64,000 bases of DNA from positions 19,614,210-19,678,209 of the forward strand of contig NC_134030.1 in assembly GCF_964204645.1 (NCBI RefSeq). Reading direction: 5' to 3'. A program made the translations under genes and the position numbers. A model generated the notes under the pieces. The model was given only the letters and a program-made list of their open reading frames with translations, had not been told where the DNA came from and searched no databases. This document shows positions 1 to 42,263 of the stretch, piece by piece. Position 1 is the stretch's first letter; every line of letters starts with the position of its first letter. Origin of the DNA: Tubulanus polymorphus. Lineage: Eukaryota; Animalia; Nemertea.

Positions 1-2293
1 GGTACATCATTATAAGCGTATCCTACTACAGTAACCGGTCCTCCTGATGTAATCAGACTGACGACGTGACGACCGTACCACATACCACCAGGACAATACG
101 GACCATAGCGTCTAGCTGTAAAATTACCACCATCATATATATAAAATCCAGCTCTCTCGCACGTCTCTGATAAAACTGTTAGTTTCAATCCATCCTCATA
201 GATATCAACTTTCTGTTTAGATTCTAAGGTATTTATACGATACATAAATTTTTCCGTCTTCGACCTCGGGAACAGATCCCTGGCAGGCAATCCGTAAATG
301 GAGCGATACATCTACAAAAATCAATAAATCACCATTAATAGAATTTCGTATCTATGTTATTCTGGATTAATCCATTTTAGAGGTATATTATGTTTTACAA
401 TTATCAAAGAATATAACCGACATATACTACAAAGAATTCAGTTTTTCATTATGCATGAAATATCCAACGCCAAATAATTGTCGAAAGTAGATCTTAAAAA
501 ATCTGTCTGGGCCACGCAAAAACTATAGCTCGTTCTTCATCAGTTTTGTTTTCCGCGCGCGTTCGTCAAAAATAGTTCGTCATTAAAAAATAGGAATAAA
601 AATGCGCATCCCGCATGCCGAAATCTGATTTCGTTTCTCGGATGAAAATAAACGCAAAAGCACGCATCCAGATAAATAATTTCATCACACTTTATACGTG
701 TTCGTCTTGAGGTCACTACTCAATTGTTACTATGGCAGGTGAGCATTTCGGTAAAGAAGTGCTTTGCAAGCTAATTCAAGGTCGTTGACGCCTACATTTT
801 CCCGTTTTCAAAGTAGAAAATAGTCGTCCTCGTCACTTTTGCAATTCGGAATGAGGCTTTATATTCCGCTCTTTGTTTCTAAGGGAGGTGCAAATAAAAA
901 GTCGACGGAATTTTTGATTATGTTTTCGGTCAAATTAAAATCAATATTTCTTATTTTTTAATACAATACAAACTTTCTCTCCGATTTTTGGTTTTTATTT
1001 CCGCGGTTCACGAATTTCACGAGGTTCACGAATTTACATTTAACAATTTAGTTATACAGCATTATCCGAGAAATAATTTTTACTCACCCTGTGTTTGTGG
1101 ACTTGTACGTCTCCTATAGAGATAGATTTTACTTCAAATTCAATTTTTACATTCGATTGTAAAACACCTGATCTTATTAGAACGCACAGTATGACGAGAA
1201 TGTCGTCAGATTTAACACTCAATGATTCCAGGTAGTTGTAACCGAGTAAAATATCAGTTCCTACAACGCGTAACCCTTCTAGTTTATATACACCAATGAC
1301 GTCATCGGATGTGCTGAGATCACGTGTCCAGTTGAAGATGACGTACTGTAACACCTGCACTGTGATAGACCAGCAGTGTAAGTGTTTTGATCGAGTTATT
1401 ACGTGTAAACTGTTGTCATCAGGAATGAGCACTCCAGACTCGTTATTAGAGATTTGAATTAACGGATTAGAGACGTTCCAATCAGATATTCTATAGATCT
1501 GAATTGATAGTTGTGATATAAGTACGTTTCGCCCAAGTAGCAAACTGATCATAGCTTTGTTTGTCTTAGTATAAAAGGATGAAGGTGGATGCCCGGTTTG
1601 TTCTGGTATTACAGCAATAAGTTCACTGCTATTCCATCCGTCATGAATTTGAACAGTTGCCGCTGGATCAGTGCCGGGATATATTTCGAATTTTATCTGC
1701 GAAAACGTGAAATTCATAGCAAAACCATCCGGGATCCCGATCCATTCCAAATACAATTTACATTGCCATATCAACATAGCAAACTTGTATCCTATCGATG
1801 TTGGTAATTTGTTAATTTTTAAATTGTATTTTGTGCAGTTGTGAATTAATTTCAAATTGTTTCGTTCTAAACGATATGTGATATAAACCCAACTTCCCCG
1901 CGCACCACCGAGGTCACTTCTAAACATCAACGAGATCGAATCGTTACGGCGGATTTCATGTTTTCCTTCGCCGCAGAATCTGTTATCGGACTCACCGACG
2001 AGAAGGTAGTTATCACTACAGAATATCGACGGCTCGATGTCGTAGTATAGTTTGATGTTGAAAGTTCCCGGTAAAGAGCTGTTGACGAACCAACGACATT
2101 CAACACCGCGCGTTAACAACGGGTAATTCGGTGAAACGATGTAACCGGACGTAGAATCGACGGGGTACCAAGTGTTGTTACAAGACGAACTGACCGTCAC
2201 AGAGTCAGACAGATCAGCGTGTGCGATGATAACTCGCCAGACGATCAGCGACGCTATAAACAGCGCTCTCAGTCGATCCATACCGAACAACAT
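1..2293 (-). CDS. GRL101-like CUB/CTLD/LDLa/LRR GPCR, copy A: exon 1 (1088-2293) and start of exon 2 (311 to window edge); continues left of the window
   Basis: Matches 34279-36571 at offset 34278. Signal peptide plus a CUB domain (SGYIVSPNYP...C.W...RFCG). Donor CACAGG|GTGAGT at 1088/1087; acceptor TTTTGTAG|ATGTAT at 312/311. Confidence 0.88.
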
Positions 2294-7967: not shown

Positions 7968-7984
7968 GATTCAAGAGATCAAAT

Positions 7985-24480: not shown

Positions 24481-25049
24481 AAAAACTCTGTTACTGTTAA
24501 AGTTACCGTTTTTCATCAACCAATACGTTTCAGATAGCTTACTCACAGCTATTCACCATATTCTTTTTCTTTAAAAAAAGTTGATTTTGAATTTTCACAT
24601 ATTTCATGCATTCGCCGATTCGGGAAGTTTTTTTTTTTAAGAACTAAATTTACCGAGTTCCCCGATTCTAAATTCGACGAAATATCAACAGTTCAGCTTT
24701 CATCGAGTTCTTTAACGAAGCGACTTTGGTGATGATCTTTTTTTCTGGGGATTTTTTTTAGGTAGCTCAGTATCTAACAGATATTTCGGAAACTTATAAA
24801 GAAAGGATTTTTCAGTAATAAACATCTTTCATCCATATCTTGATTATGTACATGTATATATCTGTTGACTGTCGCTAAGAATTGTTGTGTGGAAATCAGT
24901 TTATGATATTGCACAACTCCGCTATTTTAGTCAATAGAACGTTGTGAGGATACCTACCGTGCCAGAAATTGTCCGTAAAGCGATGAAGAGATGTGACAGT
25001 GAAAATACGGTGTTGTCATATCGCGGAATCACGGAATTTTCCAAAAACA

Positions 25050-25135
25050 CGGAAACCCGCGCACTCACCGGGGTTCGAACCCGGGTCTCGTGCGTAGAAA
25101 GCAAATTACATGGTACCGTCATGGCTATGTAGCTT
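25050..25135 (-). mobile_element. tRNA-derived SINE-like fragment (related copies at ~26520-26590 and ~21245-21315)
   Basis: B-box hairpin CCGGGTTCGAACCCCGG on the - strand. The CACTCACCGGGG.TCGAACCCGGG motif recurs at ~26525. Confidence 0.55.
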
Positions 25136-25818
25136 GTCACGATGAGTAACAGCCGCTTGCAATCTTAGAACTCACGGTTGTGAGATAATTACTATTATGC
25201 CCTCAGGAGGAGTTCCTTCGTTCTAAAACTTATTATTTAGAATATTTACAATATTTAGAATATTTTAACAACACTAAATATCACTGATAATTGTTATAGA
25301 TATTTCATCTATATTTCGTATTTCTATATTGTTTTATGTCTCCATCTTATTACTCATTGTCCTCTGAGACTGTTTGTCTGTGTCAGAATGTGTTAATTGT
25401 TTTTTGTCTCACTGTGATGTCACAACTCGTCACCTTTGTTTTTGTATCATTTTCCATGTCTCAATCTGTCTGAATCTGTGTTATATAAATAGCTATGTGT
25501 AAAAATAAAGTCAGTCCAGTTTTGGTATTCCAAACTGATAGTTCGCTCGTTACTCTTTCGCTCTGTTCCGGATTTCCGACGTCGACCATTCTTCGAGAAT
25601 AGGACTGAAAATAGCTTTGCTAAACTATTCGCGATAGGCCGTAATGTTTTCAGCAGCTGCTGAAAGCATATCCTTTTCGGCAACGATCATTCTTCAATTT
25701 TAGCAAAACGGAATTTTCTAGCAATTGAAACCGCCAAACTTTTTCAAAAGCTAAAACGATTCCGTCCATTATCTCATTGTTATTTATCAGTTATAGATAA
25801 AAGAAAACAGACTTTAAA

Positions 25819-27747
25819 ATGAAGCTGATAATATCGACTCTGTTACTGGTCTGTTTAACAACGACAGGTAAATATATGTTAATATGAAAGTCAAACTAGG
25901 CATATACAAAATAGTTACAAATTAAACCAAAAAAGATTTGGAATGAACTTATGGTCGGGAATGCGTACTTGTATGATATAGCGAACACGTGTTGATAAAA
26001 AAGTCACAATTAATGATTGAATTTTAACAAAAGAAAGGACTGATTTGATCAAATAATGCCTAATCAGTGGTCAGGCCTATACTTAAAAAACCAGCTATGT
26101 ACAATGCTTGAAACCCCACGTATAAAATCCCATGTGAGTCACATTGTTAATCTCCGTTGGCATATGTACATAGTGTCCGGGTGTGTTTGTGATGAGGGTT
26201 GGGCGCAAGCTGGAGACACAAAATGCTTCAAGTTTTTTGAGGAATCTCTCCCGCAAGACCAACATTGCGGTTCTTCAGAACTGGCCAGGATCGATAGCAT
26301 GGAGGAAAATAACGTTGCTCGAAGTAAGTATATGTTTGGGAATCCGGAGTTTTATGGAATAAAGCGTGATATAAGCGTACCTGAAACAGTACTGTCATTA
26401 TTTCAGATCAGATACCTACTGGCGTGACAACGGCTTGGCTCGGTTTTCGGAGACCATTCAACTTCACTACGGTACATTCTCAATATGAGTAGCTGTAACG
26501 ATTAACAGTGAAATTGCATACGTACACTCACCGGGGATCGAACCCGGGCCTCGTACGCAGCATGCATACTTTCACCTTAGACCAATAGCAGAACTTTTCA
26601 ATGCAAATGATTAAACCATTTTAAGCGTATAGTTTTATGGTTATCCACGCGAGTCCTTCGACTGTAAAAACTATAAAAATAAGTTTATGATCATCGGTAA
26701 ATGAACCGCCTGGCGAAAGTTTCGCTATCTTTCAGAAAAGACAAACAGAACTACGTTGTTTGGCATGCGCACGTGAGATATGATAATGGGTGATGAATAG
26801 TTTTTTTTTATAAAACCGCGTTCAGCCTGTATCACTATATAGTTAGACCGTTCAAAAATCAGAGTGCTAAAAAATCAGTGCTACGGACTGGCAAGATGTA
26901 ACCATGATTATTTCGCCCCGATATTTATAGATCATAGCTTTTTGGGTCCCCCCTGGTTGTTATTCGTTTTAAGAAATTCTGCTATCCGTCTTGACTCATC
27001 AATCTGTGGTACATTTTATGACATGTTCAGAGCAATCAAATATGGCACATACGATTAACGATCAATGAGATTCCGTCAGCCTATACATATTGTTAGGCAA
27101 ATATAAATATGAAGTCTGAAAACTATACTAATCCGCTTGTCGATGAACATACGGACTTTATAAAAAAATAAATGTTACCAAATGAAAGCCCATACACGAA
27201 AACCTAAAATTAGTGTAATAGCGGGCTACTTAAGACCATGGTTTAGGAGTTACATACTTTTTAAAGGATTTCTATCTATGAAATCAAATTAGGTATCGGT
27301 TGCCTTGGTATCCGTTTCCATGGAACATGCAGCAGTTTCCACGGAAACGGATATCGATTCCCCGAAGCCAGGATGCAAAGCTTTCGAATGATACCAAATT
27401 TGTCCATATGGTATCTCTGTTGAACGGAACCTAATTTCTAGAGGACTTTTTTGTACTTTGGTGCCCCTCTTATTTTCTCATCTTTATCGTGGGATTCTCA
27501 TTACATTATCAAGTGTGAATATTATGACGAGCCCAGTTCATCGACACGCAGCGATAATTTGCCATTAGTTTTATTTATTTCGCTGTAGGGTTTTACACGG
27601 TGGAGAATAGGAGAACCGAATGGATTCGGTGGGAAATACGGCTATGAAAATTGCGTTGAAATGAAGAGAAGAAGAGGTGTGTGGAACGATGTTGTATGCA
27701 ACAAACAAATGCCGGCTATTTGTTCGAAGGACTGTCAGCAACAATGA
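25819..27747 (+). CDS. Secreted single-domain C-type lectin B (~140 aa, EPN/WND); coding exons 25819-25867, 26174-26323, 26407-26471, 27589-27747
   Basis: GT-AG junctions give MKLIISTLLLVCLTTTVSGCVCDEGWAQAGDTKCFKFF...TAWLGFRRPFNFTTGFTRWRIGEPNG...ENCVEMKRRRGVWNDVVCNKQMPAICSKDCQQQ. Confidence 0.87.
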
Positions 27748-28594
27748 ACGAGGACGACGTGAAATCCACTAACATTCTTTCCTTGATCAATTCTTCGCTA
27801 AATCGGGGGATACCGGCACCGCTACTGTACATTCATAAAGATCCGCTAGATGATTTGTTTGGAAATTTTCAGGTTTCAAGTCCCCACTTCAGGTAAACCA
27901 ATTCTCACTGCGGATAACCTATCTTTCACCATTAGGTGTGTACCGGTACCCCAACAGGGATCTGAATTAATTTCATCTGTGTTAATATAACCCAAGTCAG
28001 ATTTGAACGTTGAAAATACATCGTCTCTTAGCAAAACTCACCACCGCTCATCCATCGACCCGCATGACGCGTCGGTGCTCAACAGGGAACCAGAGACATG
28101 ATTAAGGAGAGGCATTGGGAAAGCCATACAGACGAGGTCCTTATTCTAATTGGGAGTCGACGCCAGCTCCCCCTTGCAGAACAATTAAACGATAACTATA
28201 CACATGCATGGGTTTGGATTGAAAGCGGTGTTGAGTTATTTTGGTTCAAAATTCGTGGATTTTCAACGGTCAAATCATATATTATTTTCACTGCAATACT
28301 GTCTCTCTCATATTCGCATTTTGTTCCGTATGAAAAATAAAAGTATTCTGTTTAACGGCATTACGGTCGTCTTAGTTTCATCGATGCTCCGCAGTTCCGT
28401 TTATGCCTCGTTCGCACGAATTGGAATCTTCTTTATCTCGTTTTTCCAACAAAACATCAGTAATTCAGTACGAGAACACCAGGTGGCACTGAAGCCAGCG
28501 TAGTATTCCATTTACGTGAAATATAGTGAGTTTCGTTTAACAACATACACCTTTTCTGCTTTAAAATGATAATCGATGTACAATCGTGTTTCTA

Positions 28595-29743: not shown

Positions 29744-32700
29744 TTAGCGAGTTTTCGAAGTCCGTTTATTTCTAGCCCGAATCGATTTAACATCAATAGT
29801 GAGGATGGTGTAAAGAAGTGGATTCAGTGACGAGTTGATCGGTAGGAAAAGTACCGCCAACCAAGCCGCCACTTGGTTCGGTATTTCTACTCGCAATACA
29901 GCGCAAAACTGAACGATAATTATCGGTAACCAGCAAAATGAATTACACAGATTTATCACTAAACTCCTACGTGCCAGAATCAATTCGGTAGGATCAGCTC
30001 TACCCGAGCCGGACCTGCTTCCAGATACGAGTCTATACATCTGTGCATACGTCATCATTATTGTAGCAAGTACGACCGAGTTAAACACGGCAAAAATAGC
30101 GAATGAGTATTGCCAGGCGTGGACATCGATGGTCAGTAAATTCATAGGTAGACAAACACCAGTTGTGCCGTAAAAGTTATATCCGAAGTAAGAAGATGAC
30201 GATAGCGGTAGCATTGAAACGATGCTTAAAATGACCCAACAAATGCAGCAAATGCCGGATACAGATTTCGAAGATATGATTGGGCTTCCTGAAAATGGAT
30301 CGACGATATTTGAGTACCTTTGAAGGGTAAGAATGAGGAGAAAAGTCAAAGATCCCTCGCACGAAATCGTCAATGTAATCCCGGCGAGTCGACACGATAA
30401 ACTATCTGTCCAACTTTCCGAATTCAGGAAATATGAACCTTTATAGACGTAATCGGCTCCTGCGATCAGAAACAGATAAATCGACATCAGGAAATCACAG
30501 GTGGCAATATTAATGATGAGGATATCAGAGGATGTATTACGTGATTCGGAGGAAGCATTTCGAAACTTTTGTATGCGAAGTAAAATGACAATGATGTTCG
30601 CAAAAAAGCTGAATGAAGCGATCACCCAAATGATTGCTCTAAGAACAGTGTTACCCATCAGGTCGGAACAAGAAGAAAATTGGTCGGCTTCCGGGAGACA
30701 CTGGTCAACATTCGGAACCATGCAACAAAATTTGTACGCGTCAGAAGTCAAAGTACTTAATGCTAAAAGACTGTCGAAAATGTTTTTATCTACGGTTATG
30801 ACTTTTGAATTTTTGGTTAGATCAAGATTTCTAAGTTTTGATAACCCTTCAAACGCATTTGGTGAAATATATCTAATTCTGTTACTGCTGATATTCAACG
30901 ACTCTAAAGCGGATAAACCACTGAACACGTTTTCACCGAGTAACGACAAGGAAAGTCCGTGAAGATCGAGATCTCTAACTGACTTTAAGCCATCAAAACT
31001 GCCTTCTCCTAAATATCTCACTGGATTTCCAAAAATCAAAAGCTTTTTCAAACTATACAAACCGGCGAATGTATTAGCGGACAATGATATTATGCGGTTA
31101 TATGTAAGATCTAATGTATGTAGATTATGCAGGTTTGAGAACGAGTTTGGAACAATATAAGACAAATTGTTACGTGAAATATTAAGGAAATGTAGATAGA
31201 GGTAAGAAAAAAACGTAGATTCATTGAATACAACTCGGTTTCGTGATAAAATCAGAACTCGAGTTGATGCTGAGAAAATGCCAGTAATTTCTGCCAGATC
31301 TGCATGATCGCAATCGACTAAATAGCCTTGGCATTTACAATATTTTGGACACTTGACATTACAGTATGACTCGTCATCAGTGGTATGTTTACAATTGACA
31401 ACACCGTCACAAACTTCATATTGAGGTATACATCGGTTTTCCTGGCCACATTTGAACATGCCGGGACACGACAAAGTCTCGCAGTTTCGCTCGTCTTCTG
31501 AATTAGGACAATCGGATCGACCATCGCACACCTGTCCCATCGGTATACAGTAAGATGCTGGACATTTAACAGTACCAGCTGGACATTTGAAATCAGTACA
31601 ACCTTGTATATGCTCGAGCCTTCTACATACCGGGTAACCAATCGGCATCCTTTCTAAAATGCATCTGTGACGTCTAGAATAACAATGAGGAGATTCAAAA
31701 GAACATCTTTGTTCATCAGATTTCGTACATAAGTTTGTGAAATTAGTCGTGCAGTAGTTCTCCGTAGTGCACTGAATATTCGGGTTAACAGTTATATTTG
31801 TGACTATTTCATCTTCTTCGAGGTCCCCACCACAATCAACAACACCATCGCGATACAACAGAGAACTGATACATTCACCATTTACACACAGAAACCCGTT
31901 ACATTCATCTGAAGAGCAGCCGATCTCATCAGATTTATCTTTACAATCAACCAGTCCATCACATCGTTTATATCTACCTACACATTGTCTATTGTTGCAC
32001 TTAAACTGTTCAGAGGAACATGAAGTATGATAGCACGAGTTCTCATCTGATCCGTCAGCGCAATCTCGTACAAAATCGCACAAATTACTAACAGATATAA
32101 CTTCTCCATCGGTACAGTGGAACTGACTCTGTAAGATTGATTTCGAACAATCGAGTTCATCATCACCGTGTTGACAGTCGTTTCTGGTATCACATACGCG
32201 ATGGTCGCCGATACATCTTTGATCGTTACATTCAAATTGCCACGATTTACAACCACTTATAGAAGCCAACTCTTCACCAGTTACATTATAGGAACATAGC
32301 ACGGAATGCGCTACATCTGTGATATTATCGAAGGCAGTCACTGACCATTTCACCGTTTTTATATATGTCATCTCATCTCTGGTCAAAACTGGATTCAGAG
32401 CAAGAAATTCACTATCCGTAGCCTTCACCAGTATAGCACCATATTGATGTTCATAATGAAATATTTGAATCAAATGTTGAATTTTACTATCATTGGATAC
32501 TATACCTATTTCTCCACCAATTGTATGACACATTCTCTCAGCTTCCCGAACTGCCAATCTTTGAGTATCCCAGGCTGTAAGTATCTGATAGCAATTTCTT
32601 TCTAAACCAATCCATCCTTTAGAACATGTTGAGTTTACTGCTTTAAATATCTGAGAACGATAAGTTCCGTTTTTGTTTGAAATACTCGACAATTCGTGAT

Positions 32701-35700
32701 TGTTGATAGTTATGTAGTTATTTGCGTCTTTCTCACAAACGAAAGTTGTTCGAGTCTCCTCTATTTGACACGGGAATCGAACCCAGTTCGCTGATCCTCG
32801 TGGATTATTCAGTATCATCGCCGTACACGGCATATTGACGTCATTTATCGGTTGTTTTCGTAGAGGAGATATCAAGCCTCGTATAACTTCTGGTATCGTT
32901 TCGTTTATCATAGCAGGTCTAAACCATTCTGTGTAGCTCAACGGTTTCCTATCAGTCCAAGTGTAGAAACCATCATTCTGTTGCAAAATAGAAATCAGTT
33001 TCATTCATCGAAATGGTTTTAACAGTGTTCACGACGATTAAATTATAGATATCTAACTTGTACTTGATTTCAGTTTATTCCACTTAGATTTTGACACAAT
33101 TTACGTTCAAGATACTATAGAAATCATTTTCAATAATTATGAGAGTTTTTTAGGTATAAGTAGAGAATGCACGAGTGTCTGAATCTGTATAAAATTTCAA
33201 AAACCATTTTCAACAAAGAGAAGTAAACATTTTTATAGTAGACTTTGAAATTACCTGCCATTTCAATCCAATCATCACAATCAGCGCCGCATGTGAATAC
33301 GCCTCCAGGAGAAGTTTAGTAGCGAACAGTTTTTTTACAGCGATAATTTCATCTTGTGAGTTGATACTGAGAAGATGTCCACCGTATTTCTGTTGACAGT
33401 ACATTTCAGCGTTCTCCCAGTTCAGACGTTTGTGCTTTATGTATCTTATACACGAAACACCTGAATCTAGAAAATCTGATCGGCAGTAACTTATTTCAGG
33501 TGTTTGTAAAGGCGATTGTTCTAAAGTGTATTGAATTTGAAATGTTGGGATATAGTTTGTTGCTTCGAAGTAAACGTCGTGCCCGAGTAGACTGTACAAT
33601 ACAAGTCCAGGTACAGCGTTATTTTCACATATTTTAGTCTCGAGACGATGCAGCCCAAAGCCGATTCCATGATTACCAGGTTTCAAGATAATCTGTACTA
33701 GTAATAGAAGATCTCTGATTGTAAAAATATCAGAAGGGCTACACGAGGCTTGTCCAATATATTTAAACAGGAATCTGATGTAATATGAATGTGTATTTGT
33801 GGGGTTACGAAATGAATAGAATCGCGATTTACTCCTTTTTGTAAAAAAAGACGGATAGTTCGGTGATTGTACGACTCCACATTCCTCTAATACCCACGGG
33901 ATGACGATGAATGAATTTGAACTGATCATCGGGGAATCTCGATCTGCCTTCAATCCCAAACATTTACGTCGTAGTACTATCATTATTGCACTACTCCAGA
34001 ACCCATAACCACTTCCTTTGAATATCAGATGATTCGATACGAGACTGTTGTTCAATAATCGATTTGTAAGAGTAACATAATAACATGTAGTTAAACCGCG
34101 GGCACATACGTCAATTTGATATTCATATTCTGATAAAATATAAATGTTTTCTAAAGGAAGGCGCCGGTTTTCGGGTGTAATCACGAGACAGTGTGACGTC
34201 ATATTGATCTGATTTTCTCCTTTCCGCAGAACATACCCGTCACAATCAGTAGGAATGAATCCGAGATGCCCAGAGTAAGGTACATCATTATAAGCGTATC
34301 CTACTACAGTAACCGGTCCTCCTGATGTAATCAGACTGACGACGTGACGACCGTACCACATACCACCAGGACAATACGGACCATAGCGTCTAGCTGTAAA
34401 ATTACCACCATCATATATATAAAATCCAGCTCTCTCGCACGTCTCTGATAAAACTGTTAGTTTCAATCCATCCTCATAGATATCAACTTTCTGTTTAGAT
34501 TCTAAGGTATTTATACGATACATAAATTTTTCCGTCTTCGACCTCGGGAACAGATCCCTGGCAGGCAATCCGTAAATGGAGCGATACATCTACAAAAATC
34601 AATAAATCACCATTAATAGAATTTCGTATCTATGTTATTCTGGATTAATCCATTTTAGAGGTATATTATGTTTTACAATTATCAAAGAATATAACCGACA
34701 TATACTACAAAGAATTCAGTTTTTCATTATGCATGAAATATCCAACGCCAAATAATTGTCGAAAGTAGATCTTAAAAAATCTGTCTGGGCCACGCAAAAA
34801 CTATAGCTCGTTCTTCATCAGTTTTGTTTTCCGCGCGCGTTCGTCAAAAATAGTTCGTCATTAAAAAATAGGAATAAAAATGCGCATCCCGCATGCCGAA
34901 ATCTGATTTCGTTTCTCGGATGAAAATAAACGCAAAAGCACGCATCCAGATAAATAATTTCATCACACTTTATACGTGTTCGTCTTGAGGTCACTACTCA
35001 ATTGTTACTATGGCAGGTGAGCATTTCGGTAAAGAAGTGCTTTGCAAGCTAATTCAAGGTCGTTGACGCCTACATTTTCCCGTTTTCAAAGTAGAAAATA
35101 GTCGTCCTCGTCACTTTTGCAATTCGGAATGAGGCTTTATATTCCGCTCTTTGTTTCTAAGGGAGGTGCAAATAAAAAGTCGACGGAATTTTTGATTATG
35201 TTTTCGGTCAAATTAAAATCAATATTTCTTATTTTTTAATACAATACAAACTTTCTCTCCGATTTTTGGTTTTTATTTCCGCGGTTCACGAATTTCACGA
35301 GGTTCACGAATTTACATTTAACAATTTAGTTATACAGCATTATCCGAGAAATAATTTTTACTCACCCTGTGTTTGTGGACTTGTACGTCTCCTATAGAGA
35401 TAGATTTTACTTCAAATTCAATTTTTACATTCGATTGTAAAACACCTGATCTTATTAGAACGCACAGTATGACGAGAATGTCGTCAGATTTAACACTCAA
35501 TGATTCCAGGTAGTTGTAACCGAGTAAAATATCAGTTCCTACAACGCGTAACCCTTCTAGTTTATATACACCAATGACGTCATCGGATGTGCTGAGATCA
35601 CGTGTCCAGTTGAAGATGACGTACTGTAACACCTGCACTGTGATAGACCAGCAGTGTAAGTGTTTTGATCGAGTTATTACGTGTAAACTGTTGTCATCAG

Positions 35701-36571
35701 GAATGAGCACTCCAGACTCGTTATTAGAGATTTGAATTAACGGATTAGAGACGTTCCAATCAGATATTCTATAGATCTGAATTGATAGTTGTGATATAAG
35801 TACGTTTCGCCCAAGTAGCAAACTGATCATAGCTTTGTTTGTCTTAGTATAAAAGGATGAAGGTGGATGCCCGGTTTGTTCTGGTATTACAGCAATAAGT
35901 TCACTGCTATTCCATCCGTCATGAATTTGAACAGTTGCCGCTGGATCAGTGCCGGGATATATTTCGAATTTTATCTGCGAAAACGTGAAATTCATAGCAA
36001 AACCATCCGGGATCCCGATCCATTCCAAATACAATTTACATTGCCATATCAACATAGCAAACTTGTATCCTATCGATGTTGGTAATTTGTTAATTTTTAA
36101 ATTGTATTTTGTGCAGTTGTGAATTAATTTCAAATTGTTTCGTTCTAAACGATATGTGATATAAACCCAACTTCCCCGCGCACCACCGAGGTCACTTCTA
36201 AACATCAACGAGATCGAATCGTTACGGCGGATTTCATGTTTTCCTTCGCCGCAGAATCTGTTATCGGACTCACCGACGAGAAGGTAGTTATCACTACAGA
36301 ATATCGACGGCTCGATGTCGTAGTATAGTTTGATGTTGAAAGTTCCCGGTAAAGAGCTGTTGACGAACCAACGACATTCAACACCGCGCGTTAACAACGG
36401 GTAATTCGGTGAAACGATGTAACCGGACGTAGAATCGACGGGGTACCAAGTGTTGTTACAAGACGAACTGACCGTCACAGAGTCAGACAGATCAGCGTGT
36501 GCGATGATAACTCGCCAGACGATCAGCGACGCTATAAACAGCGCTCTCAGTCGATCCATACCGAACAACAT
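29744..36571 (-). CDS. GRL101-like (type C LGR) GPCR, ~1924 aa: SP, CUB(n), CTLD x2, LDLa x~7, LRRNT, LRRs, hinge, 7TM; exons 35366-36571, 33255-34589, 29744-32977
   Basis: Phase-0 junctions AGG|GTGAGT...GTAG|ATG and CAG|GTAATT...CAACAG|AAT; the second rebuilds a CTLD (MIGLKWQ|NDGFYTWTD). LDLa motifs DC.DGSDE, LxxLxLxxN LRRs, hinge YKFCC...FSSCSDLM, and LQRY, CWLP, NPLLY. Confidence 0.9.
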
Positions 36572-38840
36572 CTACACGACAAAATTAACCGAATCTTTCT
36601 AATTAAAGTTCAGATTTATTCCCGTCGAATGACGACCGAACACAAAATGCAATTCGTCCAATCAGAAAATTCGCTGAGAATTTTTCTGAAATAGATATTC
36701 TTTGTTGCTGATGCAATGATTTTGACACAGATTCCAATTTCGCGTGCTGAGTATTTTTCACAGACGGATCGGTTTATCAATTAATAACACATATATATTT
36801 CTAGATTTCATGTTGCCTACTGGAAGGGAAGGATCTTCAATCAATTCATATGATTTAGAATATTTAGATTCGCGCACGAATTCAGCCTGAGAAGTATAAG
36901 AACTAATGCCGATGACGTGGTTGATCTAATTTGAATATCGATTTTCTCTAAGCAGTTCAGAAAATTTCCAAACCATAGTTAAACTTACGTTAGAATTATC
37001 ACAAAACGTCTCACTCTTTAAAGCCCTCGAAAAGTGTATCAATGACTTCATTTTTAAAGCTCACTCTGTAGATATCGAATTCGAATCCGCTCATCCATAT
37101 ATCAGATATAGACTATTCCAAACTCTGCATGCGATCTCTGTCTAATCAAGACGGCTAAGATCTTAGATGATGTTTGGAGAAAAACCATCAGTAAGGTTTA
37201 CAAGTTCTATTTCATGCAATGAAATTTAAATGTTGCGATATAACCTGTCTTTTATTCAGGCCGTGCCGAGGGGAGGGGTTTGGGAGTAACGAACGAACCC
37301 AGGCACTTCATACTTGAGATGTGTCTTTTTTCAATCTAAACGCGCCTTTTTTCTTGAAATAGAACTGCCCCTGCAAAAGCTCAGCAACGGGTTCTCATTC
37401 TAGTTAACATTTTATTTGATGGTGATTTATCCTTACCTTCATCCGTCTCATTTTGCACGGAGAGGATTTGAAATAGCATTGCCCCTTCTAAAACTTTCTT
37501 TTATTTCGTAATTTGTTACCTTCCGGATACCAGTGTTGAGTAAACTCACTGTCTTCGATGACAATTTTATGCAACATTCAATCACCAGAAAATATGTTTC
37601 TCACTCTTTTAACGAAACACTTTGAGGTTTGAAATATTCATCGATGTTGATATTTGATATATAGATTGAGTGATTATCGATTGCTAGATTTGTTGGAATC
37701 CATTTTATATATCTGTTCTGTTAAGAATATTCGTTGAAATTATATCATTCTCTCTTGTTGAAGTATTATTTTCTAAACTCATCTATTAAGCAAACCATTC
37801 ATGAAATAAAAAATTAATTCATGGAAATTAGCAAAGGCGGGGCCGTTTTTAGCGGGAGGATAGGGGAAAGGTGTCCAAACATTTTTGAAATTAAGAAAAT
37901 TCACTGAGATTTTTTTATAGATTGTACTCTGATCGGAAAAACATCAAAACACTGAATATGAAAGTATGAAAATGGCAAATCATCATTTGACAATACGACG
38001 CTTTGCAGTCGCAATTTTTTTCATTGAGCAACTTTTCTTTCGCATCCCTCTGGCTACGGGTCTGAAGACTCGTAAAATTCCGGTGTGACCTACACGTGAT
38101 TTACATACCTAGATTTAAGTTGACTGCATTAATTATCAGTCATTTATTTTATCGATGATGTTTTTTTTTCTATCGAATTTCCGACTAACAATTGTATTCG
38201 GCTGTATTTCAGTACCCCTAAATCTCCTCGCTTTAAAATATTTAGTTTGTGGCTGATTTTTATGTTGTATGTTAACCCTAGCTCGTACTTGTATTAACTA
38301 TTGTGCCTTAATATTCCCTAGTAAACTCTGCTTGGAATTTGCTAAGTTCATAACTGCTTTTATATTGTATATCAACCTTCGTTTATACCATCATGAAAAT
38401 GAAAATACCATGTAAATTACCTGATAATCAAAAAATTTATCATTAGTCTATTCTTAAAATCCAATTGATAATCAGTAGTAACGCAGTAATCTAATTTCGA
38501 ATGTGTATATAGTATAGATAGAAAATAAACTGTAGCATTTTATTATCATCATGTGTTCATTTTAAACTGTTGAGATAAATCATTGGTGGCATTTTTTCCT
38601 ACTGTTATTTTTTGTTATTTTCACTGGTGGCATTTTTACCTGTGGCATTTTTCCTACAACCGAACTTCATAATACTCCTAATAGTTTTTAATCAGTATAC
38701 CCGCACCACCAACCTTTGCCTTAATCTCTGATTCTAACTCGATACTAGGTTCATTTAGAATGATAAGTTGATGGATCGAAAATGAGAGTACATAACTTCA
38801 AATTCTAGCATAAAATAGAATAGTCATTAGAATTGAATAA

Positions 38841-39794
38841 TCATTTCACCTTTTTACTACAGCGTATTCTAATACAAAAATATTCACGAATTTCTCGTCC
38901 CAGTAAAAGATATATGTAGAAATTTACTACAAAGTTACAAATAAGGAATTGATTGAAAATACCGAGTATAACTTCTTTCCGTTCCGTCGGGATTGGTAGA
39001 AATACGATAATAGTTGTCGGGAGTGTAAAAGTTGCAAATGCTAGTGAAACTGTAACCAGCATTATTGTCGTACGTTTTGATTTCGTAGTTTTCTGATCGG
39101 ACGAAACAATTTTCGAACCTCTGAATAACTGAACTATTATAAAAGAGTTCGATAGAAGAATCAAAGTTAAAGGTAGAATGTTAACGTGGATGACGATTGT
39201 AGTGAAATATTTTACTTGGTCCAATAGTTCGTAGTAACATCCGGACAACTGGTCGGAAAAATATATCGATAGAGTAGGTAGAAGATTCAACATCAGTACA
39301 TTCACTGCAGTAATTGTCAGTATAACTAATATAGCGAATCTCGGTGTACATATCAAACGAGATGTGAACGGGAAGAGCACAACCGCCGCGCGTTCTAGTG
39401 ATATCGCTACTATCAACCACGAACTATTGCAGTTTACAAGTACAATTATAAATTCATAGATTTTACAACCGATTAGTGAATTAATCATTAATAAAGGTAT
39501 TTCTTTGACGTTAAAGAGAACAAACTGTAAAACAGGCATCAGTGTATACCCAACGCAGAACATAAAATCGCAGACTGATAAAACGATAAGATAATTGGCG
39601 TATGATAATTTGCGGAATCTGCTGCTCGTCATAATCAGGAAAGTAGCTGAATTTCCAAAGGCTCCAAACAGGAACAATATAGTCAGACCAGTCAATAACA
39701 AAATGAGGTGCGTGCCAGACGCGTTTGCCACGGACATGAGAACGATATATCCAACGTAAGTTCGACCAATTTGTTTCTGAGTCAAATTCATCAT
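38841..39794 (-). CDS. Orphan class A GPCR, GPCR1b (duplicate of 4563-5516)
   Basis: 317 aa; 5 amino-acid differences from GPCR1a. Confidence 0.9.
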   Translation of the reverse strand: MMNLTQKQIGRTYVGYIVLMSVANASGTHLILLLTGLTILFLFGAFGNSATFLIMTSSRFRKLSYANYLIVLSVCDFMFCVGYTLMPVLQFVLFNVKEIPLLMINSLIGCKIYEFIIVLVNCNSSWLIVAISLERAAVVLFPFTSRLICTPRFAILVILTITAVNVLMLNLLPTLSIYFSDQLSGCYYELLDQVKYFTTIVIHVNILPLTLILLSNSFIIVQLFRGSKIVSSDQKTTKSKRTTIMLVTVSLAFATFTLPTTIIVFLPIPTERKEVILGIFNQFLICNFVVNFYIYLLLGREIREYFCIRIRCSKKVK

Positions 39795-41289
39795 TTATGA
39801 ATGAAGGTCAACGATACTTGCTGACTGTCCGAGGGTGTACTGACTATCCAAGAGTTATATGACTGTCTGTAAGTGTCCATACTGTCGGATAGTGTTCCGA
39901 CTGTCAGAAAGTACCAAGGTCTGAGAGTGTACAGACTGTCTAATAGTGTATTCGACTAGAATAAATGTGTTTGTTCGGTAAAAATAAATAATCTTTAAAT
40001 TCATATATTTCGAGAATGAATTTTCCTTCGTGCACAGGGAGAATTGAATCGAACCAAATTTGTTCATCCAGAAAATAAACGAAATTAGTCATTCAATTCT
40101 GGAAATTGGCAAATCAATTCTCCTGGTAAAACTGCAGAATACAGCTTACAACATCATCGCTTAGAGCTAATTCGAAGCTTGTATACGCTCCACTTACATT
40201 GCATCCCGGATAGATAGCTTTATTTTCATTAGTTTAGTTTTCGGCAAGCTAGTTATTCGTGTCCTTAGACTTGATCTCTACATTGTCTCACGAATTTGTT
40301 AGCTGTATTTTGAACACTTATAGTAACCCTAACACCTCTAGTCCGGCAATGTGATTCTACTAGAATTTGCCAGGTGTCGCCAGTGGTTAATCATAGATGT
40401 GAAAACTCATTTCGACGAACTGTAACTGATTCCGTGTGTCTGGGGCTGAACGGGGAGCTGCCATTTACTTTGGCAATCGAGGATTCCACTTTTGGCATGC
40501 AGAGATTGATCAGGTTCGCTAGTAGTAACTCGATCTTCCGCGTTCAATTTCTTATACATTTCAGTTAAACTTGAATGGACATTTTTCTTACATGAATCAG
40601 TATTTAAGAACTGTACCAATCACTTAGTAGAATTTAATGAATTTCAAGTATATTTGGCAGGCTCTGCGACAATGTGTGGACACGGGAGCCTAAATATTCG
40701 GTTCAAAGTTCATCTTTCAAAGTTCATGAAAGAGGAAATTATCATGACAACCTTAAGACCGAGTTATCGTCGGGCCATTTTGAAGGATAACCAGTCGTAG
40801 TTCCCATTCACCTGGGTCGGATCAAGGATTTTTTGAAGTCTGTGGCCCACTAAATAAAGAAGAGAAGACTTCCTGAATACAAGTTTTTGAATTTGTTTTT
40901 TGAGTACGAATGCAGTGACGCAAAACAGGCAACCAGTCAATAGGATGTTCACGTCGTTTTTCATGTCGGCACCGGGTGGCTATAATTTGAATTTCATCGA
41001 CCAAATTTTGAACTGGGTTTCGATTAATAAACGATGCTTTACTTCTTTACTAAGTTTAAAAAAATCGGTCGACAATTATGACCTCTAAGCTGTAAAAAAC
41101 GTCACTAGCGGTGGTGGCGTATTCAGACGCGGGTATATCTATATTTCACCTCTCGTCATAAGTTGAGTTGTGGGGTACAAATCATTGGGGTTGCGAATTA
41201 TTGATATGATGATTTATGTAGGTTAAGGAACTGTCAATCTTCATCAACCATTTTCTTAAGTTTATGACGGGTAAACGTGAAGTCAATGG

Positions 41290-42246
41290 TCATTTCACTG
41301 AATTTCTACAATGGATTTTCATGCAAAAATATTCACGAATTTCTCGTCCCAGTAAAAGATATATGTAAAAATTAACGACATAGTTACCAACTAATGACTG
41401 GACAAATATGCCATATAGGAATTCTCTCCATTCCGGTGAAATTGGTGAAAATGCAGTAATAGTGATCGGAAGTGTGAATATTGCAAATGCGAGTGAAACT
41501 GTTACAAGCATTATTGTCGTACGTTTTGATTTTGTAGTTTTCTGATCGGACGAAACCATTTTCGAACCTCCGAATATTAACTGAATTATTATGACAGAAT
41601 TCGATGTTAGAATCAAAGATAAAGGCACAAGGAAAACGTGGATGCTACTTATACTGAAAAGAATCATTTGGTCAGATAATTTATAGTAACATCCGAAAAA
41701 CTGTTGGTCGGAAACGTACATCGAAAAAATAGGTGTGAGACATAGAATCAGGAAATTAACTGCAGTAATTATCAATATTGTAAATCTAGCGAATTTAGGT
41801 GTACATATCAAACGAGATGTGAACGGGAAGAGAACAACTGCCGCACGTTCTAGAGTTATTGCTACTATCAACCACGAACTATTGAATGATGAAAACGCCG
41901 TAACAAATTCATATATTTGGCAAGTGAGCACTGAATTCATGATGAATATAGGGTCGTCCTTAACATAGAAGAGAACAAACTGTAAAACAGGCATCAGCGT
42001 AAAACTGATACAGAACGTGAAGTCACTGAGTGACAAAACGATCAGATAGTTAGCGTAAGATAAACCGCGAAATCTGCGGCTTATCATTATCAGGAAAGTA
42101 GCTGAATTTCCGAAGGTTCCAAACAGAAACACGATAGGCAGAATGATCAGTGTTACAGTACGGTAGATTCCAGACCTGTGTACAACAGACATGAGAAGCA
42201 TGTAACTGGTATAGGCTCGACCGATTTGCATCTGAGTTGAATTCAT
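41290..42246 (-). CDS. Orphan class A GPCR, GPCR2b (duplicate of 7011-7967)
   Basis: 318 aa; 3 amino-acid differences from GPCR2a. Confidence 0.9.
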   Translation of the reverse strand: MNSTQMQIGRAYTSYMLLMSVVHRSGIYRTVTLIILPIVFLFGTFGNSATFLIMISRRFRGLSYANYLIVLSLSDFTFCISFTLMPVLQFVLFYVKDDPIFIMNSVLTCQIYEFVTAFSSFNSSWLIVAITLERAAVVLFPFTSRLICTPKFARFTILIITAVNFLILCLTPIFSMYVSDQQFFGCYYKLSDQMILFSISSIHVFLVPLSLILTSNSVIIIQLIFGGSKMVSSDQKTTKSKRTTIMLVTVSLAFAIFTLPITITAFSPISPEWREFLYGIFVQSLVGNYVVNFYIYLLLGREIREYFCMKIHCRNSVK

Positions 42247-42263
42247 GATTCAAGAGATCAAAT

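What the first reader, a model, noticed from the sequence alone, without database searches (positions are those of the whole stretch)
29744..36571. Giant ~1924-aa GPCR with a CUB + C-type lectin + LDLa + LRR ectodomain
Three 'separate' ORFs (413, 459 and 1086 aa) splice in frame through canonical phase-0 sites, and the second junction completes a split CTLD. Established: GRL101/type C LGRs have LDLa + LRR + 7TM. This protein adds ~1000 aa, with 2 clear CUB domains (SPNYP motifs), about 3-4 degenerate CUB-like units and 2 CTLDs before 6 canonical and 1 degenerate LDLa. That puts four recognition-module types on one rhodopsin-class receptor, a candidate pattern-recognition GPCR. I cannot confirm whether this exact architecture has been described.
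Basis: partly seen in the sequence, partly recalled or inferred. Interest (0 to 1): 0.8.

Follow-up and report, generated by a model that had tools for sequence, protein, structure and literature searches.

The report
Giant CUB-lectin GRL101-like receptor gene
The three reading frames form one real three-exon gene for a roughly 1,924-residue cell-surface receptor of the relaxin/GRL101 type with extra CUB and lectin-like modules, and it is one of about 300 copies in a ribbon-worm genome, probably a set of varied sensors.

Summary
The three minus-strand ORFs, the four splice sites, phase 0 at both junctions and the 402+445+1077 = 1,924 aa count are all as described.

- **One gene.** All 22 paralogous loci examined keep the same exon order, orientation and splice positions. 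Exon 2 has no start codon in 21 of 22 paralogs. dN/dS is below 1 in every domain. A 2,163-aa Macrostomum lignano protein is collinear across intron 2.
- **Identity.** It is a type C LGR. Its LRR+7TM half scores highest against GRL101 (302 bits) and human RXFP1 (275 bits).
- **Architecture.** Signal peptide, five to six CUB-like units (one passes Pfam, three more by fold, two weak), a split C-type lectin-like domain, a second weaker one, six LDLa, LRR, hinge and 7TM.
A conserved motif of the gene occurs 308 times in what is very probably the Tubulanus polymorphus genome. An identical twin lies 34.3 kb away.
- **Prior knowledge.** Lectin+LDLa+LRR GRL101-like GPCR clusters, with the immune-recognition idea, were published for Biomphalaria in 2025. 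I found no paper describing the CUB-bearing giant form.
- **Function.** The pattern-recognition role is unproven. The first lectin domain lacks the classical sugar-site residues and barely varies between copies.

This scan had already found the same family on other DNA of this genome. The joined protein was not searched or folded.

The parts
35366..36571 (-). Exon 1 (402 codons): signal peptide plus three CUB-type units
   Evidence: ORF. Donor AGG|GTGAGT read directly. Intact in 103 scored genomic copies.
36491..36571 (-). Signal peptide, about aa 1-27
   Evidence: Hydrophobic N-terminus ending ...AHA|DL, read directly. The structure model gives a helix at residues 3-28. Inferred; no signal-peptide predictor was run.
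36137..36463 (-). CUB 1 (aa 37-145; SPNYP motif; four Cys at 38, 66, 92, 107)
   Evidence: Pfam CUB, 24.5 bits against a cut-off of 21.4. The model matches the TSG-6 CUB (Z 11.9, rmsd 2.5, 105 aligned) and the Gpr126 CUB (Z 11.6).
35753..36136 (-). CUB-like unit 2 (aa 146-273)
   Evidence: Covered together with CUB 1 in two-CUB matches (C1s, MASP, PCPE-1, neuropilin a1a2; about 200 aligned, Z about 10.5). No Pfam hit.
35366..35752 (-). Unit 3 (aa 274-402), probably CUB-like; poorly modelled
   Evidence: pLDDT is below 50. In the feature-based look-alike search, 19 of 30 hits are CUB clusters (score 0.93). This is a lead only.
34590..35365 (-). Intron 1 (776 nt, GT...AG, phase 0)
   Evidence: In paralogs, GTGAGT or GTAAGT sits at the same codon boundary in 17 of 20 loci, and a phase-0 AG with a pyrimidine tract precedes exon 2 in all 23 sequences.
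33255..34589 (-). Exon 2 (445 codons): three CUB-type units plus the N-terminal half of lectin domain 1
   Evidence: Intact in 95 scored genomic copies. No Met lies upstream of the homology in 21 of 22 paralogs.
34245..34583 (-). CUB-like unit 4 (exon 2 aa 3-115)
   Evidence: The model matches Neto2 CUB2, TSG-6, MASP-1 CUB2 and C1r CUB2 (Z 8.4-8.8, rmsd about 3.0, 96-100 aligned).
33918..34244 (-). Unit 5 (exon 2 aa 116-224), weakly CUB-like
   Evidence: Beta strands in the model. Foldseek aligns 394 columns to cubilin CUB5-8. Feature look-alikes are CUB at 0.90. Weak evidence.
33510..33917 (-). CUB-like unit 6 (exon 2 aa 225-360; second SPNYP motif)
   Evidence: The model matches the enteropeptidase CUB and neuropilin-2 a2 (Z 8.1-8.5, rmsd 2.6-3.0, 102-106 aligned). 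It aligns to Macrostomum P0161 residues 719-870.
33255..33485 (-). C-type lectin-like domain 1, N-terminal half (exon 2 aa 369-445)
   Evidence: Pfam Lectin_C profile positions 2-35, 20.2 bits, below the 22.6 cut-off because the domain is split. All 40 exhaustive-search hits cover this part.
32978..33254 (-). Intron 2 (277 nt, GT...AG, phase 0), splitting lectin domain 1
   Evidence: The donor G|GTAA or G|GTGA is present in 22 of 22 paralogs. Intron length ranges from 72 to 829 nt.
29744..32977 (-). Exon 3 (1077 codons plus stop)
   Evidence: 43 scored genomic copies at 79-100% identity, 42 without stops.
32729..32977 (-). C-type lectin-like domain 1, C-terminal half (exon 3 aa 1-83); nearly invariant in the family
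   Evidence: Aa 44-69 are near-invariant in 20 paralogs. Collinear with Macrostomum residues 983-1060. The RGSANWVRFPC motif is found 308 times in the genome and 0 times in the control.
32285..32632 (-). C-type lectin-like domain 2 (exon 3 aa 116-231), compact and variable
   Evidence: Pfam UL45 (C-type lectin-like), E 0.0016, below threshold. The paralog profile hits lectin domains of PLA2R, DEC-205 and mannose receptor, E 1.6e-6 to 7e-4, N-terminal half only.
31358..32251 (-). Six LDLa modules (four full, two degenerate) with a Cys-rich spacer at exon 3 aa 403-451
   Evidence: Pfam Ldl_recept_a, 126.8 bits, 6 stretches. Cys patterns read.
30743..31357 (-). Leucine-rich repeat domain
   Evidence: Pfam LRR_8, 90.3 bits. 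Collinear with the RXFP1 LRRs.
30644..30742 (-). Cys-rich hinge (YKFCC...C...C)
   Evidence: Aligned to the RXFP1 and GRL101 hinge. 88-100% identical in near paralogs.
29798..30643 (-). Rhodopsin-class 7TM domain (QRY, CWLP, NPLLY)
   Evidence: Pfam 7tm_1, 78.4 bits. RXFP1 7tmw, E 1.7e-80. Motifs read in the alignment.
1088..2293 (-). Exon 1 of the identical twin gene; its exons 2 and 3 lie just left of the window
   Evidence: Window 1-12606 matches 34279-46876 at 99.0%. Twin exons at G000:C6:19615300-19616502, 19613189-19614520 and 19609678-19612908 are 100% identical in protein.

Best explanation
Window 29744-36571 (minus strand) is one intact three-exon gene. It encodes a single-pass-secreted ectodomain fused to a 7TM receptor, about 1,924 aa in total. 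The receptor is a leucine-rich-repeat GPCR of type C, closest to GRL101 (type C2). Its usual LDLa-LRR-hinge-7TM core is preceded by a signal peptide, five to six CUB-type beta-sandwich units and two C-type-lectin-like domains. It is one member of a family of about 300 tandemly arrayed paralogs in what is very probably the palaeonemertean Tubulanus polymorphus. Shown: the gene structure, the domain content, the family size, purifying selection on all parts, and a mosaic pattern of divergence between copies. Inferred mechanism: the outer modules (CUB-like units 2, 5 and 6, and lectin domain 2) differ most between copies and capture different, probably protein or glycoprotein, ligands. The nearly constant lectin domain 1, LDLa string, LRR and hinge pass the binding event to an intact 7TM core, as the LDLa module and LRRs do in RXFP1, and the core signals through a G protein. 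The family would then be a germline-encoded set of sensors for outside cues. I put chemosensory use at about 0.45, immune or non-self recognition at about 0.35, and anything else at about 0.2.
For: **Gene model**
- Canonical phase-0 splice sites.
- All 22 paralog loci keep exon 1, exon 2 and exon 3 in order and on one strand. The gaps between the exon 1 and exon 2 matches are 79-862 nt (one of 1,585 nt), and intron 2 is 72-829 nt.
- The donor after exon 2 is conserved in 22 of 22 loci. The donor after exon 1 is conserved at the same codon boundary in 17 of 20.
- Exon 2 has no upstream Met in 21 of 22 paralogs and no signal peptide, although it is built of extracellular disulfide-bonded modules.
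- dN/dS is 0.15-0.75 in nearly all domains of all three exons.
- Macrostomum lignano PAA57333.1 is collinear with the end of exon 2 (E 1e-13) and with all of exon 3 (30% identity over about 1,050 aa, E 2e-154). It runs straight across the position of intron 2.

**Identity**
- Pfam finds LDLa, LRR_8 and 7tm_1.
- The best solved relative is RXFP1 (275 bits), ahead of LGR4 (169, mostly LRR) and LHCGR (123).
- GRL101 of crayfish and Lymnaea score 302 and 301 bits on the same 538 aa.
- CUB folds.
- R3.50, D2.50, CWLP and NPLLY are retained.

**Family**
- At least 43, 103 and 95 scored copies of exons 3, 1 and 2.
- 308 matches to a family motif against 0 for the control.

**Variable versus constant parts**
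- Identity between near paralogs is 30-78% in CUB-like unit 6 and 44-88% in lectin domain 2.
- It is 86-91% in the 7TM and 78-89% in lectin domain 1.
- dS ranges from 0.06 to 2.5 within one gene pair, which points to gene conversion.

**Context**
- The same 34.3-kb repeat unit carries three intronless Srw/rhodopsin-like GPCR ORFs.
Against: - No transcript evidence could be reached, so splicing and expression of this particular copy are inferred.
- The exon 1-exon 2 join has no cross-species support, because exon 1 aligns to the flatworm protein only at E 0.13.
- No domain shows dN/dS above 1 apart from a 34-aa linker, so there is no sign of an arms race.
- Lectin domain 1 lacks the classical Ca2+/sugar-site residues.
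- The acidic residue of the E/DRY motif is Gln here (QRY), and the C-terminal tail is only about 17 aa, so signalling properties may be unusual.
- The C2 assignment rests on bit scores, not on a tree that includes type C1 receptors.
- The structure models are of modest confidence (mean pLDDT 57 and 62), and units 3 and 5 are only weakly CUB-like.
- The chemosensory-versus-immune choice rests on neighbourhood and analogy only.
Confidence: 0.8

Rival explanations
1. The three ORFs are separate genes or gene fragments, and the in-frame splice sites are coincidence.
For: RefSeq's only visible model from this family (XP_074658304.1, 689 aa) contains just LDLa+LRR+7TM. So at least one automated annotation does not join the upstream exons. 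Exon 2 of this copy happens to begin with ATG.
Against: The tripartite unit is kept in 22 of 22 loci with conserved splice positions. 21 of 22 exon-2 frames lack any Met. Exons 2 and 3 have no signal peptide although they encode extracellular modules. A lectin domain is split exactly at intron 2 and is continuous in the flatworm homologue.
Confidence: 0.03
2. It is a receptor for an endogenous insulin/IGF-like or other hormone, as has been proposed for canonical GRL101, and the extra modules only tune that role.
For: The LRR+7TM half is closest to GRL101 and RXFP1. GRL101 has been proposed as an IGF receptor (PMC8286064).
Against: About 300 paralogs with strongly divergent outer modules do not fit a hormone receptor. 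That paper reports one such gene per ambulacrarian species studied. The first 200 aa of exon 2 have no detectable relatives in 1.84 billion representative proteins.
Confidence: 0.08
3. It is specifically an innate-immune pattern-recognition receptor.
For: CUB, C-type lectin, LDLa and LRR are all modules used by innate immune proteins (established knowledge). A cluster of lectin+LDLa+LRR GRL101-like GPCRs lies in a schistosome-resistance region of Biomphalaria sudanica (PMC12297450). A C-type lectin exon lies 11 kb downstream at 18665-18928.
Against: In the snail study, the validated variant lies in a neighbouring Zn-RING-IAP gene, not in a GRL101-like gene. Lectin domain 1 lacks sugar-site residues and is invariant. 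dN/dS is below 1. The neighbours in the repeat unit are chemoreceptor-like GPCRs.
Confidence: 0.3
4. This copy is a very recent duplicate that is silent or on its way to being a pseudogene, or the near-identical 34.3-kb repeats are an assembly artefact.
For: Three copies at 34.3-34.4 kb spacing are 97-100% identical in protein. The 12.6 kb shared inside the window is 99.0% identical, which is within the range of haplotype divergence in marine invertebrates. Some family members carry stops.
Against: All three exons of this copy are open and the splice sites are intact. Three copies, rather than two, argue against a simple collapsed-haplotype error. The family as a whole is under purifying selection.
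Confidence: 0.1

Closest known systems
GRL101 (Lymnaea stagnalis) and its orthologues: type C2 LGRs
   Same: The order LDLa string, LRR, Cys-rich hinge, rhodopsin-class 7TM. These give the highest bit scores on the LRR+7TM half (about 300 bits; 29-32% identity over three quarters of exon 3). Both are orphan receptors.
   Different: Canonical GRL101 has 9-12 LDLa and no CUB or lectin modules. One gene per species was reported in ambulacrarians (PMC8286064). It has E/DRx instead of QRY and a long C-terminal tail. Here there are 6 LDLa, about 1,090 extra N-terminal residues and about 300 paralogs.
Biomphalaria sudanica SudRes2 GRL101-like GPCRs (lectin+LDL+LRR+7TM; Nat Commun 2025, PMC12297450)
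   Same: A C-type lectin-like domain in front of LDLa, LRR and 7TM. Tandem clusters of paralogs. A recognition-receptor role has been proposed. A land-snail member of this kind (P0166) was recovered here.
   Different: The snail proteins are about 1,270-1,320 aa with one lectin domain, about two LDLa and no CUB. There are 12 genes in the cluster and 6 elsewhere. The snail LRR+7TM scores lower against this gene (183-191 bits) than canonical GRL101 does, so a common origin of the lectin-bearing forms is not shown.
Macrostomum lignano PAA57333.1 (2,163 aa, unnamed 'G_PROTEIN_RECEP_F1_2 domain-containing protein')
   Same: The same overall order: CUB units, lectin domain, second lectin-like stretch, LDLa, Cys-rich spacer, LRR, hinge, 7TM. 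It is collinear from CUB-like unit 6 to the end.
   Different: Only 25-30% identical. Pfam finds 3 LDLa. The N-terminal 700 aa are not alignable to exon 1 or to the first half of exon 2. It has DRY rather than QRY. I found no paper on it.
RXFP1 (human relaxin receptor; PDB 7tmw): type C1 LGR
   Same: The best solved homologue (E 1.7e-80), collinear over LRR, hinge and 7TM. It provides the model for how an LDLa module plus LRRs drive a 7TM core.
   Different: It has a single LDLa and no CUB or lectin modules. It is a hormone receptor encoded by a single gene.
ADGRG6/GPR126: a GPCR that carries a CUB domain
   Same: Its CUB is among the best structural matches to CUB 1 (Z 11.6). It shows that a CUB at the tip of a GPCR ectodomain has precedent.
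   Different: It is an adhesion-class (family B2) receptor with a GAIN domain. Its 7TM is unrelated and it has no LDLa or LRR.

Membership tests
LGR type C (relaxin/GRL101-type leucine-rich-repeat GPCRs) | Rhodopsin-class 7TM domain | tested here: met
   Pfam 7tm_1, 78.4 bits against a cut-off of 30.5. N1.50, D2.50, R3.50, CWLP and NPLLY are present.
LGR type C (relaxin/GRL101-type leucine-rich-repeat GPCRs) | LRR ectodomain and Cys-rich hinge directly before TM1 | tested here: met
   LRR_8, 90.3 bits. LRR, hinge and 7TM are collinear with RXFP1.
LGR type C (relaxin/GRL101-type leucine-rich-repeat GPCRs) | LDLa module(s) N-terminal to the LRRs | tested here: met
   Six Ldl_recept_a stretches, 126.8 bits.
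LGR type C (relaxin/GRL101-type leucine-rich-repeat GPCRs) | 7TM closer to type C than to type A or B receptors | tested here: met
   RXFP1 275 bits, against LGR4 169 (mostly LRR), LHCGR 123, FSHR 120 and TSHR 97.
Type C2 LGR (GRL101 subtype) | Several LDLa modules instead of one | tested here: met
   Six. The C1/C2 split is described in PMC11863921. LDLa and LRR counts are used to assign a receptor to C2 in PMC6267866.
Type C2 LGR (GRL101 subtype) | Groups with GRL101 rather than with RXFP/Lgr3/Lgr4 in a phylogeny | tested here: inconclusive
   Bit scores favour GRL101 (302 and 301 against 275 for RXFP1). No tree with type C1 sequences could be built from the sequences held.
CUB domain | Profile match, and four Cys in a C1-C2 / C3-C4 pattern | tested here: met
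   Unit 1 scores 24.5 bits against a 21.4 cut-off, with Cys at 38, 66, 92 and 107. Units 2-6 have no Pfam match.
CUB domain | CUB jelly-roll fold | tested here: met
   Unit 1: Z 11.9. Unit 2: within two-CUB matches at Z about 10.5. Unit 4: Z 8.8. Unit 6: Z 8.5. Units 3 and 5 rest only on weak feature-based leads. Model pLDDT is 57-62.
C-type lectin-like domain | Profile match over the whole domain | tested here: inconclusive
Domain 1 is split by intron 2. Its N-half scores 20.2 bits, below the 22.6 cut-off. The C-half matches only over the WxWxDG stretch. Collinearity with the flatworm protein supports continuity. Domain 2: UL45 at E 0.0016, and profile hits to the N-halves of lectin domains at E 1.6e-6.
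C-type lectin-like domain | Ca2+/carbohydrate site (EPN or QPD, plus WND) | tested here: not met
   Read by eye against the classical pattern (established knowledge): QPI(ND) stands in place of EPN/QPD, and WVR in place of WND. The same holds in all 20 paralogs and in Macrostomum. So it has the lectin fold but is probably not a classical lectin.
Innate-immune pattern-recognition receptor | Binds microbial or parasite molecules, or responds to infection | not testable with these tools
   No expression or binding data were reachable. Only an analogy to the Biomphalaria SudRes2 locus is available.
Chemosensory receptor family | Expression in sensory cells; a large, tandemly arrayed, divergent family | tested here: inconclusive
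   A large tandem family is shown, and co-duplication with Srw-like GPCR ORFs is shown. Expression is not testable.

The most novel reading that the evidence does not exclude
Ribbon worms run a germline-encoded recognition repertoire of about 300 giant LGRs. In it, old and discrete variants of a few outer modules (CUB-like units 2, 5 and 6, and lectin domain 2) are shuffled among copies by gene conversion onto a constant lectin-LDLa-LRR-7TM transducer. That would be a G-protein-coupled counterpart of the diversified LRR, Ig or lectin receptor sets of other invertebrates, used for non-self or prey/mate recognition. The flatworm homologue would mean the giant architecture itself dates back at least to the common ancestor of nemerteans and flatworms.
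Probability: 0.3. Interest if true: 0.75.

Novelty: new variant of a known kind. Interest (0 to 1): 0.55.

Why it matters
GRL101-type LGRs are orphan receptors whose role is still debated. Proposals include an insulin/IGF-like ligand, immunity and chemosensation. A family of about 300 intact copies, with clear constant and variable parts, gives a natural experiment. The variable CUB-like and lectin-like modules point to where ligands bind. The invariant lectin-LDLa-hinge block points to the transduction machinery. The finding also shows that the lectin-bearing GRL101-like receptors just described in schistosome-vector snails belong to a wider and older set of extended LGRs, seen here in a nemertean, a flatworm, a brittle star and snails. 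On the practical side, automated annotation appears to truncate these genes: the one visible RefSeq model is 689 aa. GPCR and immune-gene censuses of spiralian genomes may therefore be missing them.

Tried and rejected
1. **Intron loss on contig C9.** I first read two exon-2 copies lying in 1,608- and 1,568-aa open frames as intron loss that would prove the exon 2-3 join. On inspection, intron 2 there is simply 81 or 72 nt long, in frame and free of stops, and still runs GTAAGA...AAACAG. It supports conserved splice positions, not intron loss.
2. **Word-based search with the C9 read-through ORF.** The search used residues 1-520 and a length range of 884-2,812 aa. None of 5,079 candidates scored.
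3. **Exhaustive HMMER search with exon 2.** It gave only 40 hits, all on the CUB-6/lectin end and none on aa 1-200. No member of the worm's own family appeared in that library.
4. **Looking up the contig of XP_074658304.1.** Nothing was on record. Searching it against the genome gave at best 92% identity over aa 282-689, so its exact locus was not recovered.
5. **Literature.** No open paper pairs GRL101 with 'CUB domain' in a relevant way; the 'cub' hits are mostly DOIs. The nemertean neuropeptide-GPCR survey explicitly left LGRs out.
6. **A co-amplified knottin-like peptide gene**, a lead from another window. No single-exon Cys-rich ORF exists in this window.
8. **Joined protein.** The joined 1,924-aa protein was not assembled, searched or folded. 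Exons were handled one by one by reference.

Nothing suggests that the contig is human.

Full report
**1. The observation**

I read the junctions directly:

- Exon 1 ends at 35366, followed by GTGAGT.
- Exon 2 starts at 34589, after a T-rich tract and TAG.
- Exon 2 ends at 33255, followed by GTAATT.
- Exon 3 starts at 32977, after TTTTGCAACAG.

The three coding pieces are 1206, 1335 and 3231 nt. Both introns are therefore phase 0, and the product is 402+445+1077 = 1,924 aa. Junction 2 joins ...MIGLKWQ to NDGFYTWTD..., the core of a C-type lectin fold. Pfam sees the first third of Lectin_C at the end of exon 2.

**2. Is it one gene?**

I could not reach transcript data, so I used comparison instead.

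The window is G000:C6:19614210-19678209 in a 268-Mb assembly. Each exon has many intact copies in this genome.

I fetched 22 paralogous loci from seven contigs. Their identity to this gene is 45-90% in exon 1, 48-77% in exon 2 and 67-87% in exon 3. The results:

- All 22 keep the three pieces in the same order and on the same strand.
- The donor after exon 2 is G|GTAA or G|GTGA in 22 of 22.
- GTGAGT or GTAAGT follows exon 1 at the same codon boundary in 17 of 20.
- Intron 2 ranges from 72 to 829 nt.
- In 21 of 22 paralogs, the open frame upstream of the exon 2 homology holds no Met.
- A phase-0 AG behind a pyrimidine tract sits at its start in all 23 sequences. It is often the AG of the closing TAG.

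Exons 2 and 3 encode disulfide-rich extracellular modules but have no signal peptide of their own. Only exon 1 has one.

dN/dS against eight near paralogs is below 1 in nearly every domain of all three exons. The exceptions are a 34-aa linker and a few CUB-unit comparisons.

A Macrostomum lignano protein (PAA57333.1, 2,163 aa) aligns collinearly to exon 2 aa 204-443 (E 1e-13). It also aligns to exon 3 aa 5-1058 (30% identity, E 2e-154), so the flatworm protein runs uninterrupted through the place where intron 2 sits here.

The exon 1-exon 2 join has only within-genome support, because exon 1 matches the flatworm protein at E 0.13.

One early idea failed. Two copies on contig C9 lie in 1,568- and 1,608-aa frames. 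This is not because the intron was lost. There it is 72 or 81 nt long, in frame and free of stops.

**3. What the protein is made of**

*Exon 3.* It carries six LDLa stretches. Four have the full six-Cys pattern and two are degenerate, with a Cys-rich spacer between the fourth and fifth. LRRs, a Cys-rich hinge and a 7tm_1 domain follow.

*LRR+7TM half.* Its best solved relative is RXFP1 (E 1.7e-80, 275 bits, collinear). It is ahead of LGR4, LHCGR, FSHR and TSHR. On the same 538 aa, GRL101 of crayfish and Lymnaea score 302 and 301 bits. With several LDLa modules, this fits the type C2 (GRL101) subtype as papers define it (PMC11863921; PMC6267866). I could not build a tree with type C1 sequences, so I call the C2 placement probable.

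*7TM motifs.* N1.50, D2.50, R3.50, CWLP and NPLLY are present. The acidic residue of E/DRY is Gln (QRY) here and in another family member. The tail after helix 8 is only about 17 residues.

*Exons 1 and 2.* I modelled them separately with alignments of 20 and 23 paralogs (A1, A2). Confidence is modest, with mean pLDDT 57 and 62. All the best fold matches are CUB proteins.

| Unit | Position | Evidence | Strength |
|---|---|---|---|
| 1 | exon 1 aa 37-145 | Pfam CUB 24.5 bits; Z 11.9 to TSG-6 CUB | clear |
| 2 | exon 1 aa 146-273 | covered in two-CUB matches, Z about 10.5 | by fold |
| 3 | exon 1 aa 274-402 | feature-based look-alikes only | weak |
| 4 | exon 2 aa 3-115 | Z 8.8 | by fold |
| 5 | exon 2 aa 116-224 | feature-based look-alikes only | weak |
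| 6 | exon 2 aa 225-360 | Z 8.5 | by fold |

*Lectin-like domains.*

- Domain 1 straddles intron 2.
- Domain 2 (exon 3 aa 116-231) is weak. It matches UL45 at E 0.0016. A paralog profile hits the N-terminal halves of lectin domains in PLA2R, DEC-205 and mannose receptor at E 1.6e-6 to 7e-4.
- Read against the classical EPN...WND pattern, domain 1 has QPI...WVR. It therefore probably does not bind sugar in the classical Ca2+-dependent way.
- The C-terminal half of domain 1 is almost invariant across paralogs.

The joined protein was not assembled, searched or folded. Every search used single exons by reference.

**4. The family and the organism**

- Contig C9 is 16,481,795 bases long. That is the same length as the contig recorded for the only named close hit, XP_074658304.1 of Tubulanus polymorphus. 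The genome is therefore very probably that palaeonemertean.
- A degenerate pattern for the 11-residue motif RGSANWVRFPC, allowing one mismatch, matches 308 places in the genome. The reversed control matches none.
- The first-look candidate counts for exons 1 and 2 were 374 and 367. So the family has about 300 or more copies, mostly in tandem arrays on C6, C9 and C12, with smaller groups elsewhere.
- This gene has an identical twin 34.3 kb to the left, whose exon 1 is at window 1088-2293. A third copy, 97-99% identical, lies another 34.4 kb away. Window 1-12606 equals 34279-46876 at 99.0%.

**5. How the copies differ**

- Between this gene and near paralogs, the 7TM, LDLa string, hinge and lectin domain 1 stay 78-100% identical, with dN/dS of 0.15-0.29.
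- CUB-like units 2, 5 and 6 and lectin domain 2 fall to 30-88% identity, with dN/dS of 0.23-0.62.
- dS is very uneven within one pair. Against L006 it is 0.06 in CUB 1 and unit 3, 0.19 in the 7TM, 1.07 in lectin domain 2 and 2.5 in CUB-like unit 6.
- That mosaic is what gene conversion would produce if it homogenised some segments while others persisted as old variants.
- Variable patches are short and lie somewhat more often in predicted loops than in strands.
- There is no domain-level signal of positive selection.

**6. Relatives elsewhere and the literature**

An exhaustive HMMER search of 1.84 billion representative proteins with exon 2 gave only 40 hits, the best at 1e-13. All were on the CUB-6/lectin end. 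The inner CUB-like units are therefore lineage-specific or fast-evolving.

Related extended LGRs do exist:

- The Macrostomum protein, with CUB x2, lectin, LDLa x3, LRR and 7TM.
- An Amphiura filiformis model, with lectin x2, F5/8C, CUB, LDLa and LRR.
- Snail proteins with lectin, LDLa, LRR and 7TM.

The snail type is published. Twelve such genes cluster in the SudRes2 schistosome-resistance region of Biomphalaria sudanica. The authors propose that the lectin domain presents pathogen ligands to the receptor (PMC12297450). A GRL101-like receptor is enriched in starfish sensory tentacles (PMC6267866). GRL101 has also been proposed as an IGF receptor (PMC8286064). I found no paper on CUB-bearing LGRs or on this nemertean expansion.

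**7. Reading**

The gene and its architecture are real.

- The most likely mechanism is a modular sensor. Variable CUB-like and lectin-2 modules bind different, probably protein or glycoprotein, ligands. A constant lectin-1, LDLa, LRR and hinge block relays this to an intact 7TM, by analogy with RXFP1.
- Whether the family serves chemosensation or immunity cannot be decided here.
- The co-duplicated intronless Srw/rhodopsin-like GPCR ORFs in the same repeat unit tip me slightly towards chemosensation.
- The snail locus and a lectin exon nearby speak for immunity.

**8. Earlier notes of this scan**

Other windows of this genome had already been read as arrays of the same family, with about 300 copies, variable outer modules and a snail precedent. 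I re-tested the copy number, the mosaic divergence and the snail paper, and I agree with those notes. A suggested co-amplified knottin gene is not present in this window.

**Verdict:** a confirmed observation, a partly supported interpretation, and a new variant of a known receptor kind.

Noticed in passing
window 1-12606 and 34279-46876: A 12.6-kb stretch is repeated at 99.0% identity with a period of about 34.3 kb. With a third copy to the left of the window, this makes three near-identical units. Each holds one giant receptor gene plus three small GPCR ORFs. It could be a very recent segmental triplication or, less likely, an assembly artefact.
   Followed up: partly
window 38841-39794, 41290-42246, 45672-46634 (twins at 4563-5516, 7011-7967, 11401-12363); also 51741-52592, 54806-55963, 59218-60258, all minus strand: Intronless ORFs of 283-385 aa match Pfam 7tm_1 and the nematode-type chemoreceptor families Srw, Srx and Srsx. 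They form a cluster of small rhodopsin-like GPCRs interleaved with the giant receptor genes.
   Followed up: partly
window 18665-18928 (-): An 87-aa ORF encodes the C-terminal part of a C-type lectin domain (Lectin_C, 23.5 bits, E 9.6e-5). Another reader noted a pair of short secreted lectins at 18060-28020. I did not work out the gene models.
   Followed up: partly
window 49235-49720 (-): A 161-aa ORF has only a weak, sub-threshold match to Bflower_2 (E 0.0033). Another reader flagged this place as a repeat-rich secreted protein.
   Followed up: no
L001:5357-5437, L002:5511-5582 (also L013, L022): In one subfamily on C9 and C22, intron 2 is only 72-81 nt long, in frame and free of stops. ORF finders therefore report fused frames of 1,568-1,608 aa. 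Retention of this intron would insert 24-27 residues into lectin domain 1 without breaking the frame.
   Followed up: partly
G000, 308 places (e.g. C6:19646977-19647009 = window 32768-32800): The 33 nt encoding RGSANWVRFPC are almost letter-identical, synonymous sites included, in most copies on C6. They differ at a few synonymous sites on other contigs. This is consistent with local gene conversion on top of protein-level constraint.
   Followed up: partly
P0001 = XP_074658304.1 (Tubulanus polymorphus), contig C9: The only RefSeq model of the family that the searches returned is 689 aa (LDLa+LRR+7TM only). Its best genomic match found is 92% identical over aa 282-689. Automated annotation may truncate or mix members of this family.
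   Followed up: partly
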